DNA of 64,000 nt, from positions 152,116 through 216,115 of the IMG/VR virus record IMGVR_UViG_3300025012_000027; one strand, written 5' to 3'. The first letter of the stretch is position 1. Every line of letters starts with the position of its first letter. A program made the translations under genes and the position numbers. Positions 1 through 15,922 of this stretch are shown piece after piece. The notes beneath the pieces are model-generated. The model saw only the letters and a program-made list of their open reading frames with translations. It did no database searches and was not told the origin of the DNA.

Positions 1-486
1 AACCGCATTCTTAGTACAGTCTTCTTGACGCCATAGAACCGCATTGTATGCTTCAGTTAGTGTAGGAACTACAAACGACCGACAATCAAAACATGGAAAT
101 TCGTTGATCTTTTCTGGAAGATATTCTGCCAATTTTTTGTTAAAATATGCCGCGGCAAATGATGCTAGCACAGAATCTAACTTTTGAAAGCGACCGCCGA
201 ATGGATACTCGGTCATACTATCAGTAGTTGTATACCACACGAGAGTAATTTCATCCGACTGCACATAACCAACAAGTGCGCCAAAACGATCCACTAACTC
301 ACGCATAGTATCTCGCATGAGTTGGGATAGTCGCATATCAAAAGGACGCTTTAATCCCTTAGTAAAAGAGTGGAACGATTTGCCATCGAGCCGAGCAATA
401 AGTGGCTGGCCCTTGAACGCTACTCTGGAAGTAGAAGGAGATTCGTATTGTTTCATACGATCCCCAAAAGATGTCTTATCTGTCAT
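1..486 (-). CDS. thg1: tRNA(His) guanylyltransferase Thg1-like protein (3' end runs off the window)
   Basis: Manual translation MTDKTSFGDRMKQYE...IARLDGKSFHSFTKGLKRPFD...GYVQSDEITL matches Thg1 motifs (RLDGxxFH, YxQSDEI); absent from the ORF track. Confidence 0.9.
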   Translation of the reverse strand, partial: MTDKTSFGDRMKQYESPSTSRVAFKGQPLIARLDGKSFHSFTKGLKRPFDMRLSQLMRDTMRELVDRFGALVGYVQSDEITLVWYTTTDSMTEYPFGGRFQKLDSVLASFAAAYFNKKLAEYLPEKINEFPCFDCRSFVVPTLTEAYNAVLWRQEDCTKNAV

Positions 487-1260: not shown

Positions 1261-1935
1261 TTACCATAATAAATCGAAATTACCTTTTAGAACAGTGTTA
1301 CATGATGCATCCTTGTTTGTGCGGTGATCAGAAACCCTATTGTCCTGGAGCCTGTACGTGCGAATTTTATCGCCCCTCATTCCAGACCCAACTTGGTTCT
1401 TTCTATAATGTGCTAAGTCGTTATTATACACGGTTTTCGCTGATGCATCAACTCTTTTAGTAATATCTTTTAGAGCTAAGTCGTAACTAGTTATACGACT
1501 TCGAGTTTGAGCTGTTGCTACAACCCCGGTTGGAATATGCGTTAGTCGGCACGAACATTTCACTTTATTACGATTTTGCCCACCAGCGCCCGTGCCACTA
1601 TACCATTCTATCCGAAGATCCTTTTCGGGTATATTAGCAGTGGTTATCTCGACATCTTTGTCTATGATAGCAACGGTCACCGTGCTAGTGTGGACCCTAC
1701 CTTTGCGCTCTGTAGGAGGCACTCGTTGAATCCTGTGCCCACCAGCTTCATTGGCCAATCCCGAAAGATCCGAACCTTCCAGGAGAATCTCATACCCTCC
1801 TGGAAATTCATCTTCCGCTAGAATGATTCAGCCGACCCTAGCCGCGTGTTTCTTATACGCCGTAGCTAGGTCCTTAACAAACAACTTACTGTCATCCCCG
1901 CCTTCAGCGGAGCGTATCTCTATCATGCGTTTCAT
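1261..1935 (-). CDS. class I release factor-like protein (RF1-type PxT and GGQ motifs, no N-terminal domain 1) with in-frame TGA at 1828-1830
   Basis: AGGAGA SD, then MKRMIEIRSAEGGDDSKLF...HAARVG*IILAE...GGHRIQRVPPTERKGRVHTST...GAGGQNRNK, all in one frame. Confidence 0.85.
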
Positions 1936-5043: not shown

Positions 5044-5526
5044 CTATGCGGCCTTTTGACCATCCAACACAAACTTCATTCTGTCTGCAGCATATGATGC
5101 CGCAAATGCCTTTGGCTTAATCATAGGAACAACGTTGCAAGTTCCTTTTATGTACCCGATCGCTTGTTGCACAACACAGTTAGATCCATGCATATCACTG
5201 GCGTTAAGATCCAAGTGAATCTCCACATGACGATCTTCTAACACATCAGCCAATTCATGGAACAGTGCGGATACTTTCACGACTTCTTGCATCAATCGCA
5301 TTGCGGGTTTACTTTTCTTCTGGTCGTAGTCTCGTTCACGTTCAACCGATCCGAAAATCTTGCAGCCATGATTTCCGTCGATATGCACGACTACGGCTAA
5401 CGTATAGTCTGCATACCAAGTTCCTGCGATGTTTAGCCGCTCACTATCAGCCCCTAGGTACACTTTAGTGCCTTCGCTTTGAGCCAATATAAATTCTTTA
5501 ACCGCCGCAATGTCTAGTTTACGCAT
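5044..5526 (-). CDS. RNase H-like YkuK family protein
   Basis: YLGADS, EIHLDLN and AASYAAD motifs. Confidence 0.8.
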   Translation of the reverse strand: MRKLDIAAVKEFILAQSEGTKVYLGADSERLNIAGTWYADYTLAVVVHIDGNHGCKIFGSVERERDYDQKKSKPAMRLMQEVVKVSALFHELADVLEDRHVEIHLDLNASDMHGSNCVVQQAIGYIKGTCNVVPMIKPKAFAASYAADRMKFVLDGQKAA

Positions 5527-6019: not shown

Positions 6020-6095
6020 TGGTGGTAATGGTAAGATTCGAACTTACGGTAGGCGCCGTATGAAGACGCTGCATTGGCCTCTTTGCTACACTACC
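6020..6095 (-). tRNA. tRNA-Met/Ile2(CAT)
   Basis: GCGTC-TTCATAC-GGCGC arm; CCA. Confidence 0.85.
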
Positions 6096-6109
6096 AATAT
6101 TTAATATCA

Positions 6110-6184
6110 ACCTCATTGCAAGTAGGAGTCGAACCTACATCGCCGCCGTGAGGCAGCATCCTATCCGTTAGAAGAGTGCGAGGT
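6110..6184 (-). ncRNA. tRNA-like element with collapsed anticodon loop (Glu-like arms, no CCA)
   Basis: D-arm TCTT-CTAACGGAT-AGGA; GCTGCC-TCAC-GGCGGC; T-arm GTAGG-TTCGACT-CCTAC. Confidence 0.55.
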
Positions 6185-6233
6185 CTTCGGGATCATGACT
6201 CCCGATTCTGGGGAAGGGTAATTACTCCTCCGT

Positions 6234-7226
6234 ACCATATTAAACCGTATTACGATCACATCCAGCTGAATTTTCGCTGATCTCATCCAGATTCATCGAG
6301 TTTCGAGTTTCGACCACACCCTGGAATCCAATACGGTTTAATATGGTGGCCGGAACCTATCCCGGCCTTAACACCCGATATTCTTTAGCGTCTCCATACG
6401 GTCTACCAGCTTTCTCGTAAAGGGCTACTGGCGGTTGTGTACTTCGTCGTCGGGACTCATAGTTTACGCTATGTTATCATCAGTTAATCCGCATAGGCAT
6501 TGCGGTGTACCATATAGAAACATACTAAAGCAGGCTTTCAACGTGTTTGGCTTCTCTGGTCTGCTTCGCCTCCAACATGGCTAATATGTTTCTATATGGT
6601 CTGTAGATGGTGTGTTGTTACACTAAATCGAACTTCAGCCTTACCGTTTCCGGGGTGCCTCTGTACTTAACCTGGTGGCTCACGTGAGATTCGTATACTC
6701 TAGAGCCTTATGCTCTATTTTCTACGTTCGATACCTTACAATGCCCTTCTACTCAGTATCTACACACTCAACGTGCCTTTGTCGAACTCTTTAAAGGATG
6801 GCTACTTCTAAGCCCACCTTCCGTCTACAAAACCATATTTTAACTGACTAATATTTCTGTATGTTGACGCATACAGGTTTCGCAGCCCGTCAAAGCCACC
6901 GAAAATCACCCGACTCGCTGGTCGAAATGACCCCCGTCAATCAGTTAAAATATGGTGGGTCTGTTTCTCAGCCAACCCGTTCAACTGTCTCTACAGTTGC
7001 TATAGCATATAGTTAAACATCTTTTCTGATGATCTGGATTGTGTCCAGGTACTATATTTTAATACTTTCGAGATCCCAGTCCCAATTGGCATATGACCTC
7101 CAACTAACCCTGTTCCTACTGATACTTCGGGACCCACGCCATGATACGCGCCTTTGCCCTTAGTAGATCTTAAACTCCCCAACGTATGCATCCTCAGTTC
7201 GTCTAATGAAAGTATTAAAATATAGT
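6234..7226 (-). repeat. array of four 16-19 bp inverted-repeat stems (AC[CT]ATAT...ATAT[GA]GT) enclosing and separating structured RNAs
   Basis: Perfect stems bounding 6234-6347, 6509-6600, 6832-6956 and 7051-7226. Confidence 0.85.
6601..6830 (-). ncRNA. ncRNA containing a 23S rRNA GTPase-associated-centre (H43/H44) mimic
   Basis: GGAAGGTGGGCTTAGAAGTAGCCATCCTTTAAAGAG...GTGTAACAACACACC, closed by GTAGACGG/CCATCTAC. Confidence 0.8.
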
Positions 7227-7283
7227 TTGTTTCTTGCTATGTGTTATTGTAACACAGTTTTAGCAAGAAACAACTAATTATTT

Positions 7284-7748
7284 TCATTGTGTATCTAAAA
7301 CAACAGTATCTCTAACATTCATCAGACACTTGCCTAGATTGTTCTGACCAACATCGTTACAAACGCCCCAAAACGTGTCGTGCCACCAATTCGTTTCTTC
7401 AATGTACTTAGTCCCAGTGGACTTCAACAATGCCATTAGAGATTCGTTTTGCTCGAACTTGGCGTATAATACTTGCTGCATCTTATCAACGCGAACATAG
7501 TTCCAATCAGACCTAAGAGTGACCAGTTGTCCAAACTTCTTTGCGGCCGGACCATCCATCGCGGTCAACATAAGCTTTTCACAGATGTCAAACGTTTTGC
7601 AAGACATATATGCACCTTCTGAGCACCGATACACTCTACCTTCGAAAGTAAAGTCTTCCAAATGGAAGTTTGATAGTGGGCGATATTTTCCAAACAACCC
7701 ATAGATATGAGTGTCAGTTTCTCGAGTGTCTACAATAGCTGGTTTCAT
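7284..7748 (-). CDS. NADAR family protein
   Basis: LSNFH, SEGAYMSCK, AKFEQN, DTFWG and GQNNLGKCLM motifs. Confidence 0.9.
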   Translation of the reverse strand: MKPAIVDTRETDTHIYGLFGKYRPLSNFHLEDFTFEGRVYRCSEGAYMSCKTFDICEKLMLTAMDGPAAKKFGQLVTLRSDWNYVRVDKMQQVLYAKFEQNESLMALLKSTGTKYIEETNWWHDTFWGVCNDVGQNNLGKCLMNVRDTVVLDTQ

Positions 7749-8086
7749 AATAAATCCGTTGTAGCGTGGCGTTTAGCTGCTTCATCTAATCTCCATTCCC
7801 AAGCAGTTACAGGGTCGCCTAATTGCCCAGTAACTCTACGCATGGCGTTCATCACAGCCGCCTGTCTAATAGTAATTTCAATTGCGCCGTTAGCAACTGC
7901 TATAGCTCTTTTTGATATAGCGATATCATAATGGCTACCACTCGTCTTTTCTGGCGATTGCCACCATTTGCGATCAACCCCTATTAGGTCAGCCATTGCA
8001 TGTAACTCTTCATCAGTATCGGCTAGCATGTGACACATCTTCATTCTACCATATGCGGCTTGCATGTTATCGACGTACACGGTCAT
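7745..8086 (-). CDS. DUF4031-like protein
   Basis: MTVYVD...CHMLAD...ELHAMA...HYDI. Confidence 0.75.
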   Translation of the reverse strand: MTVYVDNMQAAYGRMKMCHMLADTDEELHAMADLIGVDRKWWQSPEKTSGSHYDIAISKRAIAVANGAIEITIRQAAVMNAMRRVTGQLGDPVTAWEWRLDEAAKRHATTDLL

Positions 8087-8921: not shown

Positions 8922-9016
8922 ACTTTATATGAGCATACTGGATTCGAACCAGTATTAGATACCTAGTTAAAGGTTTCAGCGCACCATTGCCGTCTCACTT
9001 GACGCTCATATAAAGT
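8922..9016 (-). ncRNA. tRNA-like element inside a 13-bp terminal stem
   Basis: ACTTTATATGAGC/GCTCATATAAAGT stem; T-arm ACTGG-TTCGAAT-CCAGT; no canonical anticodon arm or CCA. Confidence 0.5.
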
Positions 9017-10996: not shown

Positions 10997-11281
10997 ATTA
11001 ACATTATAAAACATACCCATCTAAAAACGCTGCTACTAACCCAACACCCTACACGAGCACGATGAAGTGGGTCACGTGTTATCACTGACAGATATGTTTT
11101 AAAAATGACTCCTTACACCCGCTTGTGGCGACTGTAATCTCCCGATTGAGTGTGTAAACATCACCATGTAAGGAATCTGTCTATATAAATTTTTAATGAA
11201 CCGTCAAGTGTAACTCTATCATTGCCACTTATTAACTGCTACAAATGTATTATAACACACTTTCTGCAGTCGTCAACATAT

Positions 11282-13325: not shown

Positions 13326-13417
13326 TGGCGGACGCCGGAGGAGTCGAACCCCATCCCATTTCTGAGAACCTGGTTTTCAAGGCCAGTCGCAGGACCATCC
13401 CCGCTGCATCAACGTCC
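13326..13417 (-). tRNA. tRNA-Ser(TGA)
   Basis: CTTGAAA loop; long variable arm; G73. Confidence 0.88.
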
Positions 13418-13507: not shown

Positions 13508-13585
13508 TGGCAGGGGAAGTGAGATTTGAACTCACGATGACGATTTCAAAGACCGTTGCCTTAGGCCGGACTAGGCGATTCCCCA
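13508..13585 (-). tRNA. tRNA-Gln(TTG)
   Basis: ACGGT-CTTTGAA-ATCGT; CCA. Confidence 0.88.
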
Positions 13586-13772
13586 ATAAATCATATTCAA
13601 GAACCCATAGTTAATTTGGAGGTTCTTGAATATGACACCATATGTCATATGCCCTTTATCGCCCATTGGTGTAGTCTGAAGAGTACTCGACTATCTTATC
13701 ATATATTCCGCAAAATATATGAGAGGGGTCTGGCGCTATTTATATACCCCGAATCCGGACGGGGTGTAATTA

Positions 13773-14459
13773 TTAAAACAACGACAATGCTTTGTCGACT
13801 TCAATCTTAAACCATTCACCGTTGCTGCGATCAGCAACTCCAGCAAATCTACCTAACAATTCTTTCTCATGTGACCGTCTATCATGCGTCCACTTAACCG
13901 TTATAAATGTAAACGCCTGGTGCGGATCGTTTGGAATATTGTATGCCCGCAATCTCTTCTCATAGTCTATAGTCATCCCAACCTTTATCCACCCAGGGAA
14001 GGATGGGTTAACAAGTAAGTAAACAAATCCCTCCAAAAACTTTACTTGCTCACCTCTAATTCTAATCTCGTCGCCATACTTTGCACGGATAGTTGCTAAT
14101 CGATCGCTAAGCGTTGGCACGATTCTCACCGGTGCTTTCACCGGCTGAGTGATATCAACGCTCACTGTACGACCAGCTATATATTCCGCCTGCATCAATT
14201 TTAAGGCATTTAGCATATCACTCGCTTGATCTTTAGGCAAATTAAAACGTTTCTTAATCTCAGAAACACTCATCTTCCTATGTCCGTAAATGAACCATTT
14301 CTTAGCCATCCACAATCTTTCCTCAAATTCCGACGGCGATACGCGTACAGCACAGACCACACGACGTTTCTTTGGTTTTGGCAAAGATCGACCGTACTTG
14401 GTTACTATTTCAAAATTTGTCTGTAGTCCTTTAATCGTTTCAAACTTGCGAGTTTTCAT
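13773..14459 (-). CDS. T5orf172/GIY-YIG-like endonuclease-domain protein
   Basis: GFVYLL...IKVGMT...KRL...GEWF motif. Confidence 0.8.
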   Translation of the reverse strand: MKTRKFETIKGLQTNFEIVTKYGRSLPKPKKRRVVCAVRVSPSEFEERLWMAKKWFIYGHRKMSVSEIKKRFNLPKDQASDMLNALKLMQAEYIAGRTVSVDITQPVKAPVRIVPTLSDRLATIRAKYGDEIRIRGEQVKFLEGFVYLLVNPSFPGWIKVGMTIDYEKRLRAYNIPNDPHQAFTFITVKWTHDRRSHEKELLGRFAGVADRSNGEWFKIEVDKALSLF

Positions 14460-14503
14460 ATTAACTATAGTATAACACAAAATTCTTCACTAAAACAAGA
14501 AAC

Positions 14504-14909: not shown

Positions 14910-15173
14910 TCAAGTCTTTTCAGAGATATTTTGATTTAAATCGTTGGCGGTTTTATATCGGTCGTATTTTCTATTCAATAGGTTTGAGTTGGCCGTGTCT
15001 CTGACGAGCCAGTTATCCGAAGCTGACAGCGTAGTCAGCTGTTCGTCGGATGCGTTTGTATTTTTAGCTACTATAAGCGCGACTTCGGATGATACGGATC
15101 CATCATCAACCAATTCATCGAGGTGATCTTTAGTACCATATTTAGCTAGAAATTGTTTTTGGCTTGAATTCAT
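14910..15173 (-). CDS. short LRV/HEAT-like repeat protein
   Basis: N-terminus (FLAKYGTK) paralogous to the adjacent gene. Confidence 0.7.
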   Translation of the reverse strand: MNSSQKQFLAKYGTKDHLDELVDDGSVSSEVALIVAKNTNASDEQLTTLSASDNWLVRDTANSNLLNRKYDRYKTANDLNQNISEKT

Positions 15174-15922
15174 AGTTTTCTACTCGCTAGATTCTCTTTC
15201 GCGACACGTCTAACATATCCGTGTTCATCATTAGCTAGTTTATCTAGATGTTCTTTCGAGGCATTTGGGTTACTGGCTACAGATTCTCTAACATACTCGC
15301 TTTTATCAGTAACCAGCTTGTCTAGATGATCTTTAGTTGCATTTGGACTGCTGGCCACCGACATTCTAACCACTTCTTCTTCATCATTAACCAGCTTGTC
15401 TAGATGATCTTTAGTTGCATTTGGACTGCTGGCCACCGACATTCTAACCACTTCTTCTTCATCATTACCCAGCTTGTCTAGATGCTCTTTCGAGGCGTTT
15501 ACATTCTTGGCTGCGGTTGCTCTAACCACTTCTTCATCATCATTAACCAGCTTGTCTAGATGCTCTTTAGTTGCATTTGGATTCTCGGCTACCGCACGTC
15601 TAACCCCTGCATCATCATCGTTAACCAGCTTGTCTAGATGCTCTTTCGAAGCAGTTGGGTTACTGGCTACCGCACGTCTAACATGCCAGTGTTCATCATT
15701 AGCTAGTTTATCTTGATGGACTTTAGTTGCATTTGGATTCTCGGCTACAGCTTCCCTAACATACTCGCTTTTATCGTTAACCAGCTTGTCTAGATGATCT
15801 TTCGAAGCAGTTTGACTTTTAGCTACCGCACATCTAACCTTCCAGTCTTTATCGCCGACCACTGTATCTTGATGGACTTTAGTACCGTACTTGGCTAGAA
15901 AAAGGTGTTGTTTATCATTCAT
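15170..15922 (-). CDS. leucine-rich-repeat-variant (LRV/HEAT-like) 24-aa repeat protein
   Basis: About 9 tandem VRxAVAxNPNAxKxHLDKLVND repeats (72-bp DNA repeats). Confidence 0.85.
   Translation of the reverse strand: MNDKQHLFLAKYGTKVHQDTVVGDKDWKVRCAVAKSQTASKDHLDKLVNDKSEYVREAVAENPNATKVHQDKLANDEHWHVRRAVASNPTASKEHLDKLVNDDDAGVRRAVAENPNATKEHLDKLVNDDEEVVRATAAKNVNASKEHLDKLGNDEEEVVRMSVASSPNATKDHLDKLVNDEEEVVRMSVASSPNATKDHLDKLVTDKSEYVRESVASNPNASKEHLDKLANDEHGYVRRVAKENLASRKL

What the first reader, a model, noticed from the sequence alone, without database searches (positions are those of the whole stretch)
6234..7226. Cassette array of ncRNAs punctuated by ACCATAT...ATATGGT stems
Seen: about 1 kb without a credible ORF holds four perfect 16-19 bp stems. 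Their outer ends are shared, their inner sequences differ but stay paired, and each encloses a different 60-140 nt structured loop. Different structured RNAs lie between them. Related AU-rich stems occur at 8922-9016, about 11007-11101 and 13591-13634. Inference: RNase III-type processing signals that cut a polycistronic transcript into a set of small RNAs (decoys or mimics, one being the rRNA mimic).
Basis: partly seen in the sequence, partly recalled or inferred. Interest (0 to 1): 0.68.

Follow-up and report, generated by a model that had tools for sequence, protein, structure and literature searches.

The report
CCA-anchored clamp hairpins in phage tRNA array
The four long stems belong to a widespread, undescribed family of RNA hairpins in the tRNA gene arrays of freshwater T4-like phages; each starts at the ACCA end of one RNA, ends just before the next RNA, and holds a variable extra RNA in its loop, most likely so that a double-strand-specific RNase can cut the long transcript apart.

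Summary
Window 6234-7226 contains four 16-19 bp stems (loops 54, 78, 93 and 138 nt), no credible ORF, and lies inside a 23-tRNA array transcribed from the minus strand. The whole 216-kb genome has only 14 such inverted repeats.

In about 160 related phage loci the same stem (consensus CCAUAUUGAAGCACAUU and its complement) starts in the encoded discriminator-CCA end of the upstream tRNA. It ends 0-10 nt before the next tRNA.

G.U pairs outnumber A.C about 3:1 on the tRNA-sense strand, so the helix is kept at RNA level. The stem is the conserved unit. Loops run from 10 to 199 nt and are unrelated except between orthologs. Some loops are real RNAs: a conserved ~220-nt family with compensatory changes, tRNA-like bodies, and tRNA-His.

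A profile built only from relatives ranks the arms of elements C, D and B in the top 10 of 432,200 positions in this genome.

RNase III-type processing is the most economical mechanism but is untested: no RNA data exist and the phage has no RNase III gene. The decoy role proposed for the four cargos has no support here. I rate it a new variant of a known kind, of moderate to good interest.

The parts
7051..7226 (-). Element A: 19-bp perfect clamp stem (5' arm 7226-7208, 3' arm 7069-7051 as read on the minus strand) with a 138-nt cargo. The stem starts ACUAUAU, so the first C-G of CCA/UGG has covaried to U-A.
   Evidence: cargo z +0.16
6832..6956 (-). Element B: 16-bp perfect clamp stem starting ACCAUAU, with a 93-nt cargo. 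This is the only cargo that folds better than shuffles.
   Evidence: z -2.58; both arms rank 9-10 of 432,200 genome positions with the relatives-only profile
6509..6600 (-). Element C: 19-bp clamp stem (one G.U on the minus strand) with a 54-nt cargo. It is the closest match to the family consensus.
   Evidence: arms rank 1-2 genome-wide, 20.5 and 20.3 bits
6234..6347 (-). Element D: 18-bp perfect clamp stem starting ACCAUAU, with a 78-nt cargo.
   Evidence: arms rank 6-7
7227..7273 (-). Long hairpin (13 bp plus an inner 7 bp) directly after the NADAR gene. Its 3' end abuts the ACUA that starts element A.
6957..7050 (-). Spacer RNA A-B, 94 nt. It ends in a small hairpin followed directly by the ACCA of element B.
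   Evidence: z -2.95; no homolog found
6601..6831 (-). Spacer RNA B-C, 231 nt. It contains a 23S rRNA GTPase-associated-centre (H43/H44) look-alike at 6773-6821. A 7-bp terminal helix is followed by the ACCA of element C.
   Evidence: Rfam LSU match, E 7.5e-7; homologs in tRNA clusters of Pseudomonas phages pf16 and UNO-G1W1; fold
6348..6508 (-). Spacer RNA C-D, 161 nt. It ends in a 6-bp hairpin followed directly by the ACCA of element D.
   Evidence: z -1.17; no homolog found
6096..6233 (-). Spacer between element D and tRNA-Met. It is a tRNA-like remnant with a T-arm at 6122-6138 and is not called as a tRNA.
6020..6095 (-). tRNA-Met(CAU) directly downstream of the array; it encodes CCA.
13591..13635 (-). 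Family member with almost no cargo: 15-bp perfect stem, 15-nt loop, ending 5 nt before tRNA-Gln (13508-13585). It shows that the stem itself is the unit.
8922..9016 (-). 13-bp perfect stem enclosing a 69-nt tRNA-like body. A T-arm sits next to the 3' arm. This is a degenerate family member that starts ACUU.
5044..5526 (-). DUF458/YkuK RNase H1-clade nuclease-like gene embedded in the tRNA array. It is syntenic with the arrays of all relatives used here and is a candidate array-processing enzyme (inference only).
   Evidence: PMC3985635

Best explanation
The four stems are copies of a conserved RNA 'clamp' helix used in the tRNA operons of a clade of T4-like phages.

Proposed mechanism:
1. The array is transcribed from the minus strand together with the tRNAs.
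2. In the transcript, the nucleotides that follow one stable RNA, starting with its discriminator-CCA (ACCA), pair with the nucleotides just ahead of the next stable RNA. This gives a 15-20 bp, almost perfect, AU-rich duplex.
3. The duplex loops out whatever lies between, from 10 to about 200 nt.
4. The duplex acts as a processing stalk, like the stalks around 16S and 23S rRNA. A double-strand-specific endonuclease of the host (RNase III, or a Mini-III-type enzyme) cuts it.
5. The cut separates the flanking RNAs. Their short tails are then trimmed to CCA by 3' exonucleases, and 5' ends are made by RNase P. The loop RNA is released capped by a remnant of the helix.

In this window the flanking RNAs are not tRNAs but other structured RNAs, one of them a 23S GTPase-centre look-alike.

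Shown: the stems, their family, their strand, their anchoring at CCA and at the next 5' end, and the variability of the cargo.
Inferred: co-transcription, the cleavage, the enzyme, and any function of the four cargos.
For: - Four stems, far beyond chance.
- All 23 tRNAs lie on the minus strand.
- The same stem motif occurs in many relatives, where all 1,334 tRNAs are on the same strand as the stems and 97% encode CCA.
- Of 119 family-like stems, 47 start 2-5 nt inside the ARAGORN tRNA end, that is at NCCA. About 50 end between -5 and +10 nt of the next tRNA.
- Non-Watson-Crick pairs are G.U 86 against A.C 29 on the sense strand, compared with 92:64 in unrelated inverted repeats. In 84 non-redundant stems the ratio is 61:17, and most positions show several pair types.
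- A profile built from 61 relatives' stems ranks the arms of C, D and B within the top 10 of 432,200 positions in this genome.
- Loops run from 10 to 199 nt and are unrelated except between orthologs. No identical copies occur within a genome, so the elements are not recent transposon copies.
- Some cargos are genuine RNAs. A ~220-nt family has 25 of 55 pairs with compensatory change. There are also tRNA-like bodies and tRNA-His in cultured phage BUCT-ZZ01.
- Such a hairpin left on a tRNA 3' end would block 3' exonucleases, so an endonuclease that cuts duplex RNA is logically needed (inference from established tRNA 3' maturation).
- Duplex size fits RNase III substrates (PMC1540722, PMC6212723).
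Against: - There are no RNA reads for this phage or its relatives, so no RNA ends are known.
- The stems are 16-19 bp, at the short end for non-specific RNase III cutting.
- The stem sequence is conserved over about 17 nt across distant phages. That is more than RNase III is known to need and hints at a sequence-specific partner or at homogenisation of a repeat.
- The phage has no RNase III gene and its host is unknown.
- tRNAs only 5-10 nt apart in the same arrays evidently mature without such stems.
- Three of the four window cargos show no excess structure and no homologs.
Confidence: 0.5

Rival explanations
1. The helices are uncut structural clamps or insulators. They stay intact, make each inserted RNA fold on its own without disturbing neighbouring tRNAs, and protect the ends of the released RNA from exonucleases. 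Separation is done only by RNase P and single-strand nucleases outside the helix.
For: - The stem spans exactly from CCA to the next 5' end, so RNase P cleavage at the next RNA already frees one side.
- Cargo-free members exist (loops of 10-16 nt).
- Perfect helices with G.U on the sense strand fit a purely structural role.
Against: An intact hairpin that includes the CCA would leave the upstream tRNA unusable, because its CCA would be paired and extended. This cannot be the end state for the 47 stems that start at a tRNA CCA. The conserved stem sequence is also not needed for a purely structural role.
Confidence: 0.17
2. A sequence-specific nuclease, not generic RNase III, recognises the conserved ACCA/UGGU-proximal duplex. 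Candidates are a host Mini-III-type enzyme, whose preferred duplex site is ACC^U, or the DUF458/YkuK RNase H-like protein encoded inside these arrays.
For: - About 17 nt of stem sequence are conserved across phages whose neighbouring protein is only 61-79% identical.
- ACC is kept even where no tRNA precedes the stem (window elements B, C and D).
- Bacillus Mini-III prefers ACC^U in duplex RNA, and its natural 23S stalk site contains ACC (PMC4357697).
- A DUF458 gene sits in the arrays. It is found in 16 of 91 short loci picked only by the stem 15-mer.
- YkuK falls in the RNase H1 endonuclease clade (PMC3985635).
Against: - The fourth base is A, not U, so the Mini-III site is matched at only 3 of 4 positions.
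- Element A has ACUA.
- DUF458 also occurs in tRNA-array phages without these stems (DLP_6).
- No biochemical data exist for DUF458.
- ACCA may be conserved simply because it is the tRNA end.
Confidence: 0.15
3. The stems are a selfish or recombination-driven DNA repeat: terminal inverted repeats of a MITE-like element, or short homology blocks that let cargo segments be swapped between tRNA arrays. The RNA hairpin would be only a tolerated by-product.
For: - The same 15-mer arm occurs in at least 119 IMG/VR stretches, with unrelated cargo between the arms. This resembles cassette systems.
- The number of elements per array varies between relatives.
- A T5orf172/GIY-YIG-like gene sits at the head of the array, and homing endonucleases are known in the T4 tRNA region (PMC2330249).
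Against: - No target-site duplications flank the arms (flanks).
- No two copies with the same cargo occur in one genome.
- The strong G.U over A.C bias on the sense strand is not expected for a DNA-level signal.
- The arms covary rather than keeping one protein-binding sequence in the window copies.
Confidence: 0.1
4. The stems act on transcription, as terminators, attenuators or promoters that tune expression along the array.
For: Several 3' arms are followed by U-rich stretches in relatives (flanks). The hairpins sit between genes.
Against: No terminator-like or promoter-like site coincides with the four stems. The stem bases are AU-rich rather than GC-rich, loops reach 199 nt, and many stems abut the next tRNA with no U-tract.
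Confidence: 0.05

Closest known systems
RNase III processing stalks of bacterial rRNA operons (16S and 23S flanking helices, with tRNAs in the spacers)
   Same: A long-range helix forms between sequences on either side of a stable RNA inside a polycistronic stable-RNA transcript that also carries tRNAs. The helix is about two turns long and nearly perfect. Cleavage would release the enclosed RNA and its neighbours.
   Different: The helix here is shorter (15-20 bp). It starts exactly at the CCA end of the preceding RNA. It is conserved in sequence across many sites and phages. It encloses small, unrelated cargos (10-199 nt) or almost nothing. Cleavage has not been shown.
Phage T7 early-region RNase III hairpins (R1.1 type)
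   Same: Phage-encoded hairpins between genes of a polycistronic transcript, of similar size, relying on the host enzyme.
   Different: T7 sites have an internal loop, lie between mRNAs, and carry no cargo in the loop. These stems are perfect helices in a tRNA array with large loops.
Mini-III (MrnC) cleavage of the pre-23S stalk at ACC^U
   Same: Duplex RNA with ACC at the base of a stalk next to the mature end of a stable RNA (PMC4357697).
   Different: The fourth base is A. The host and its enzymes are unknown. Nothing has been tested.
Stable non-tRNA RNAs and large ornate RNAs (GOLLD, ROOL) in phage tRNA islands
   Same: Non-coding RNAs of unknown function embedded in phage tRNA arrays. A relative of this phage (L071) carries GOLLD in its array (PMC12286853).
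   Different: No sequence or structure match to any Rfam family. The defining feature here is the shared clamp helix, not the cargo.
Engineered tRNA-scaffold or clamp designs for expressing RNAs
   Same: An arbitrary RNA is held in a loop closed by a stable helix and expressed from a tRNA context, so that cellular tRNA enzymes process it.
   Different: This is natural, and the helix lies between tRNAs rather than replacing an anticodon arm. The likeness is an analogy only.

Membership tests
RNase III substrate / processing stalk | Intramolecular RNA duplex of roughly one and a half to two helical turns | tested here: met
   16-19 bp perfect stems in the window and 13-28 bp in the family. The minimal E. 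coli substrate is a 34-nt hairpin and the enzyme groove holds about 22 bp (PMC1540722, PMC6212723).
RNase III substrate / processing stalk | rnc-dependent cleavage of both strands with a 2-nt 3' overhang | not testable with these tools
   Only DNA runs hold this phage. The contigs laid on it show no RNA ends.
RNase III substrate / processing stalk | No antideterminant base pairs in the proximal and distal boxes | not tested
   The boxes are defined relative to the cleavage site, which is unknown.
Mini-III preferred site | ACCU/AGGU in duplex RNA | tested here: not met
   The stems have ACCA/UGGU (B, C, D) or ACUA/UAGU (A). Only ACC is shared with the site in PMC4357697.
tRNA | Cloverleaf recognised by ARAGORN or the Rfam tRNA model | tested here: not met
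   No tRNA call in 6096-7283 at E up to 10. Only a T-arm remnant at 6122-6138 and a tRNA-like body in 8922-9016 were seen.
Any Rfam family (GOLLD, ROOL, YrlA, ribozymes and others) | Covariance-model match | tested here: not met
   Only chance-level hits in 6090-7300. The sole real hit is the LSU fragment at 6773-6821.
Bacterial Y RNA (YrlA) with Ro/Rsr | Ro (TROVE) protein gene in the genome and a long terminal stem with a tRNA-like module | tested here: not met
   No TROVE domain in the 216-kb genome. No YrlA match.
MITE / transposon terminal inverted repeats | Target-site duplication and several near-identical copies | tested here: not met
   Flanks show no duplication. All cargos differ within a genome.
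Integron attC cassette sites | R''/R' core sites RYYYAAC and GTTRRRY at the ends of an imperfect palindrome | tested here: not met
   The ends are ACCATAT/ATATGGT. No integrase search was made.
Intrinsic terminator | GC-rich stem, short loop, U-tract | tested here: not met
   No terminator-like site coincides with the four stems.
CCA-anchored inter-tRNA clamp hairpins (the family defined here) | 5' arm matches the relatives-only profile (CCAUAUUGAAACACAU-like) | tested here: met
   The arms of C, D and B rank 1-2, 6-7 and 9-10 of 432,200 positions. A does not, because its CCA has become CUA.
CCA-anchored inter-tRNA clamp hairpins (the family defined here) | Stem starts at the CCA end of a tRNA and ends next to the 5' end of a tRNA | tested here: inconclusive
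   Met in relatives and for 13591-13635. For elements A-D the flanking RNAs are not tRNAs, though each stem is preceded by a helix plus ACCA or ACUA.

The most novel reading that the evidence does not exclude
The clamp helix is a dedicated phage platform for plugging arbitrary small RNAs into tRNA operons. A sequence-specific duplex nuclease would cut at the conserved ACCA/UGGU-proximal helix. That nuclease could be a host Mini-III-like enzyme or the array-embedded DUF458 RNase H-like protein. One cut would create the CCA end of the upstream RNA and release helix-capped cargo RNAs. Cargos such as tRNA-like bodies, together with neighbours such as the 23S GTPase-centre look-alike, would act on the host translation or defence machinery.
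Probability: 0.15. Interest if true: 0.8.

Novelty: new variant of a known kind. Interest (0 to 1): 0.6.

Why it matters
Phage tRNA arrays are usually annotated as tRNAs separated by junk. This work shows a conserved RNA helix that organises the non-tRNA parts of such arrays in many uncultured freshwater, groundwater and sediment phages and in one cultured cyanophage.

If the helix is a processing stalk, it explains how these phages mature tRNAs that are followed by long inserts. It also marks the loops and spacers as a reservoir of small phage RNAs. That reservoir includes a new ~220-nt structured family and a 23S GTPase-centre look-alike.

The work gives a simple search handle, a stem starting at CCA, for finding such RNAs. 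It also points to a natural counterpart of the RNA scaffolds used in synthetic biology. A cultured model exists: Synechococcus phage BUCT-ZZ01 on S. elongatus PCC 7942.

Tried and rejected
- Near and distant DNA searches of cultured phages with the array found only the rRNA-like spacer in pf16 and UNO-G1W1.
- The NADAR neighbour gave non-syntenic loci without tRNAs.
- blastn and nhmmer of all cargos and spacers against about 160 related loci found no homologs of the window cargos.
- The metagenome scan found no relative closer than 76% protein identity apart from the window's own contig, so the four cargos cannot be tested for covariation.
- Rfam at permissive thresholds gave nothing for the cargos.
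- Public runs are DNA only. Laying the contigs showed no variants in the stems. It showed only that 6775-6822 is also matched by many abundant contigs in these samples, apparently true 23S genes of the community.
- The genome has no phage RNase III, CCA-adding enzyme, RtcB or Ro/TROVE gene. Rnl1-like and Rnl2-like ligases are present. I considered that RNase P cuts might leave a nick that a ligase could seal into a circle, but I have no evidence and it would inactivate the tRNA.
- The promoter and terminator scan was uninformative.
- A MotA-box or late-promoter reading of the arm sequence was considered and dropped: spacing to any -10 element is not conserved, and it would explain only one arm.
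- A sarcin-ricin-loop reading of the second conserved block of the rRNA-like RNA was considered, but Rfam gives no such match.
- DUF458 has no solved relative by sequence and no functional literature.
- The high-scoring profile hit at genome position 6331 has no partner arm.

Full report
**Setting.** The window is the last 64 kb of a 216,115-bp IMG/VR virus record rated complete. It encodes a T4-type baseplate protein, a tail sheath, a family B DNA polymerase and ribonucleotide reductase. It carries 23 tRNA genes, all on the minus strand, between 1179 and 13585. The same DNA occurs in groundwater and sediment metagenomes. No RNA run holds it.

**The observation.** Searches confirm four inverted repeats:
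- D: 6234-6251/6330-6347, 18 bp.
- C: 6509-6527/6582-6600, 19 bp with one mismatch, which is a G.U on the minus strand.
- B: 6832-6847/6941-6956, 16 bp.
- A: 7051-7069/7208-7226, 19 bp.

Loops are 78, 54, 93 and 138 nt. Three stems start ACCATAT. A starts ACTATAT with the partner changed as well, so pairing rather than the letters is kept there. Beyond the seventh base the arms differ but stay complementary.

A scan of the whole genome finds only 14 perfect inverted repeats of 13 bp or more with loops of 10-260 nt, and four of the five with arms of 16 bp or more are these. From the same numbers I estimate about 0.01 such repeats by chance. The longest ORFs in the stretch (63, 51 and 49 aa) match nothing in PHROGs. 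Minus-strand RNA folds are more stable than plus-strand folds for A, B and D.

**What ACCAUAU is.** I fetched 80 viral and 79 further metagenomic loci through the DUF458 gene that lies 1 kb from the array. In these loci all 1,334 ARAGORN tRNAs lie on one strand, 97% encode CCA and 59% end ACCA.

The same loci are full of stems whose 5' arm reads (N)CCAUAUUGAAGCACAUU and whose 3' arm is its complement. Of 119 family-like stems, 47 begin 2-5 nt inside the tRNA end as ARAGORN reports it, that is at the discriminator or the CCA. About 50 end between 5 nt inside and 10 nt ahead of the next tRNA.

So ACCA is the 3' end of the preceding RNA, and UGGU is the last part of the leader, or the first bases, of the next one. 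The hairpin fills the gap between two stable RNAs and makes a junction with their acceptor stems.

**RNA or DNA.** In the family stems the non-Watson-Crick pairs are G.U or U.G 86 times and A.C or C.A 29 times when read on the tRNA strand. The ratio is 92 to 64 in the other inverted repeats of the same loci. In 84 non-redundant stems anchored at CCA the ratio is 61 to 17, and most positions show three to five different Watson-Crick pair types.

That set was selected for pairing, so the pair table alone proves little. The strand bias was not selected for, and it points to an RNA helix on the tRNA-sense strand.

**Membership of the window copies.** A position weight matrix built only from 61 stems of relatives was run over both strands of the whole genome (432,200 positions). 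The two arms of C rank first and second (20.5 and 20.3 bits), those of D sixth and seventh, and those of B ninth and tenth. A fails because its CCA has become CUA. The only other high hit, at genome position 6331, has no partner arm.

Elsewhere in the window:
- 13591-13635 is a 15-bp member with a 15-nt loop, ending 5 nt before tRNA-Gln.
- 8922-9016 is a 13-bp stem around a tRNA-like body with a T-arm.
- The hairpin near 11007-11101 is imperfect and does not begin with CCA.

**Stem against cargo.** Loops in the family run from 10 to 199 nt. All-against-all comparison of the loops groups only orthologs from closely related contigs. No genome has two copies with the same cargo. The window cargos and spacers have no homolog in about 160 loci or in cultured phages, except the rRNA-like spacer.

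Only cargo B and spacer A-B fold better than dinucleotide shuffles. The conserved unit is therefore the stem.

Some cargos are nonetheless real RNAs:
- A ~220-nt RNA closed by a 20-bp family stem recurs in at least eight loci. It has 25 of 55 predicted pairs kept through changes on both sides and no Rfam match.
- Seven of 83 cargos carry a T-arm next to the 3' arm, and some fold as cloverleaves.
- In the cultured Synechococcus phage BUCT-ZZ01, family stems fill the gap between tRNA-Lys and tRNA-Met and end 4 nt before tRNA-Ile. A non-family leader-trailer stem encloses tRNA-His.

**How widespread.** In 62 of the 91 loci fetched, a partner arm lies within 320 nt, and 55 loci carry three or more tRNAs. 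Phages DLP_6, pf16 and UNO-G1W1 have tRNA arrays but no such stems. Four searches of the paper library found no description of these hairpins. That is not proof of novelty.

**Mechanism.** A hairpin that begins at CCA would stay on the 3' end of the upstream RNA after RNase P frees the downstream one. It would also block 3' exonucleases. An endonuclease that cuts duplex RNA is therefore the simplest way to finish maturation.

The stems have the size of RNase III substrates (PMC1540722, PMC6212723). The architecture, a helix around a stable RNA set among tRNAs, is that of rRNA operon stalks. The phage has no RNase III gene of its own, so a host enzyme would act.

The roughly 17-nt sequence conservation is more than RNase III is known to need. 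Two leads follow from it:
- Bacillus Mini-III prefers ACC^U in duplex RNA, and its 23S stalk site contains ACC (PMC4357697). Here the fourth base is A.
- An RNase H1-clade protein of unknown function (DUF458/YkuK; PMC3985635) is encoded inside these arrays. It also occurs in phages without the stems.

I put the processing-stalk reading at 0.5. The rivals, scored in their own section, are an uncut structural clamp, a sequence-specific nuclease, a DNA-level repeat and a transcription signal.

**Comparison and verdict.** The element works like an rRNA processing stalk or a T7 RNase III hairpin. It differs in being anchored at a CCA end, conserved in sequence, repeated along tRNA arrays and loaded with unrelated cargos. 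It matches no Rfam family and fails the tests for tRNA, Y RNA, MITE, attC and terminator.

I rate it a new variant of a known kind. The claim that the four cargos are decoys has no support.

Noticed in passing
window 6601-6831 (-), core 6773-6821: A 231-nt RNA whose 5' part closely resembles the 23S rRNA GTPase-associated centre (H43/H44, the L11 site). Homologs sit in unannotated gaps of the tRNA clusters of Pseudomonas phages pf16 and UNO-G1W1. They share two strongly conserved blocks and a closing helix. Many abundant contigs in the metagenome runs, apparently true 23S genes, match 6775-6822 with 1-4 differences.
   Followed up: partly
window 1-486 (-), 1261-1758 (-), 7284-7748 (-), 7745-8086 (-): Translation- and RNA-related genes are interleaved with the tRNAs: a Thg1-like tRNA-His guanylyltransferase, an RF-1/PCRF-domain release-factor-like protein of only 165 aa, a NADAR protein and a DUF4031 protein.
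   Followed up: partly
window 5044-5526 (-): A DUF458/YkuK RNase H1-clade protein is embedded in the tRNA array. It is conserved in that position in more than 150 related contigs and also occurs in Vibrio, Cronobacter, Xanthomonas and roseophage genomes. Its function is unknown, and it could be an array-processing nuclease.
   Followed up: partly
window 13773-14480 (-): A protein with a T5orf172/MUG113 (GIY-YIG-like) domain lies directly upstream of the first hairpin and tRNA of the array. This recalls the SegB homing endonuclease in the T4 tRNA region.
   Followed up: no
L070 2009-2235, L052 678-902, L031 5153-5374, L117 565-786, L153 2232-2453, L125 767-993, L082 7494-7737, L074 6004-6240: A conserved ~220-nt structured RNA enclosed by a family stem and directly following a tRNA. 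It has several helices with compensatory changes and invariant single-stranded blocks. It is not in Rfam.
   Followed up: partly
L071 8631-9094 and 10993-11195: A 214-kb relative carries a GOLLD RNA (205.7 bits) with an embedded tRNA, and a group I intron, in its tRNA array.
   Followed up: no
L089 2171-2270; L222, L243, L056, L156; own genome G000 149305-149398: tRNA-His genes in this clade are repeatedly enclosed by 12-13 bp leader-trailer helices that extend the acceptor stem. In the window's own genome, a tRNA-Met lying 2.8 kb before the window start sits inside a 16-bp perfect inverted repeat.
   Followed up: partly
window 6096-6233 (-) and 13330-13417 (-): Two tRNA-like stretches are not called as tRNAs. 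One is a 138-nt segment with a perfect T-arm (6122-6138) and a broken acceptor helix. The other is an 88-nt stretch with a sub-threshold tRNA-Sec match (33.5 bits against a 47-bit cut-off).
   Followed up: no
window 6945-6956 with 7051-7062, and 6830-6843 with 7215-7228: Elements A and B share their outer 12 nt, so alternative pairings are possible. The 3' arm of A can pair with the 5' arm of B and enclose spacer A-B. The outer arms of A and B can pair and enclose both elements.
   Followed up: no
window 15170-15922 (-): A 250-aa protein made of leucine-rich-repeat-variant/HEAT repeats, with a lysine/alanine-rich histone H1-like stretch, lies just beyond the tRNA array.
   Followed up: no
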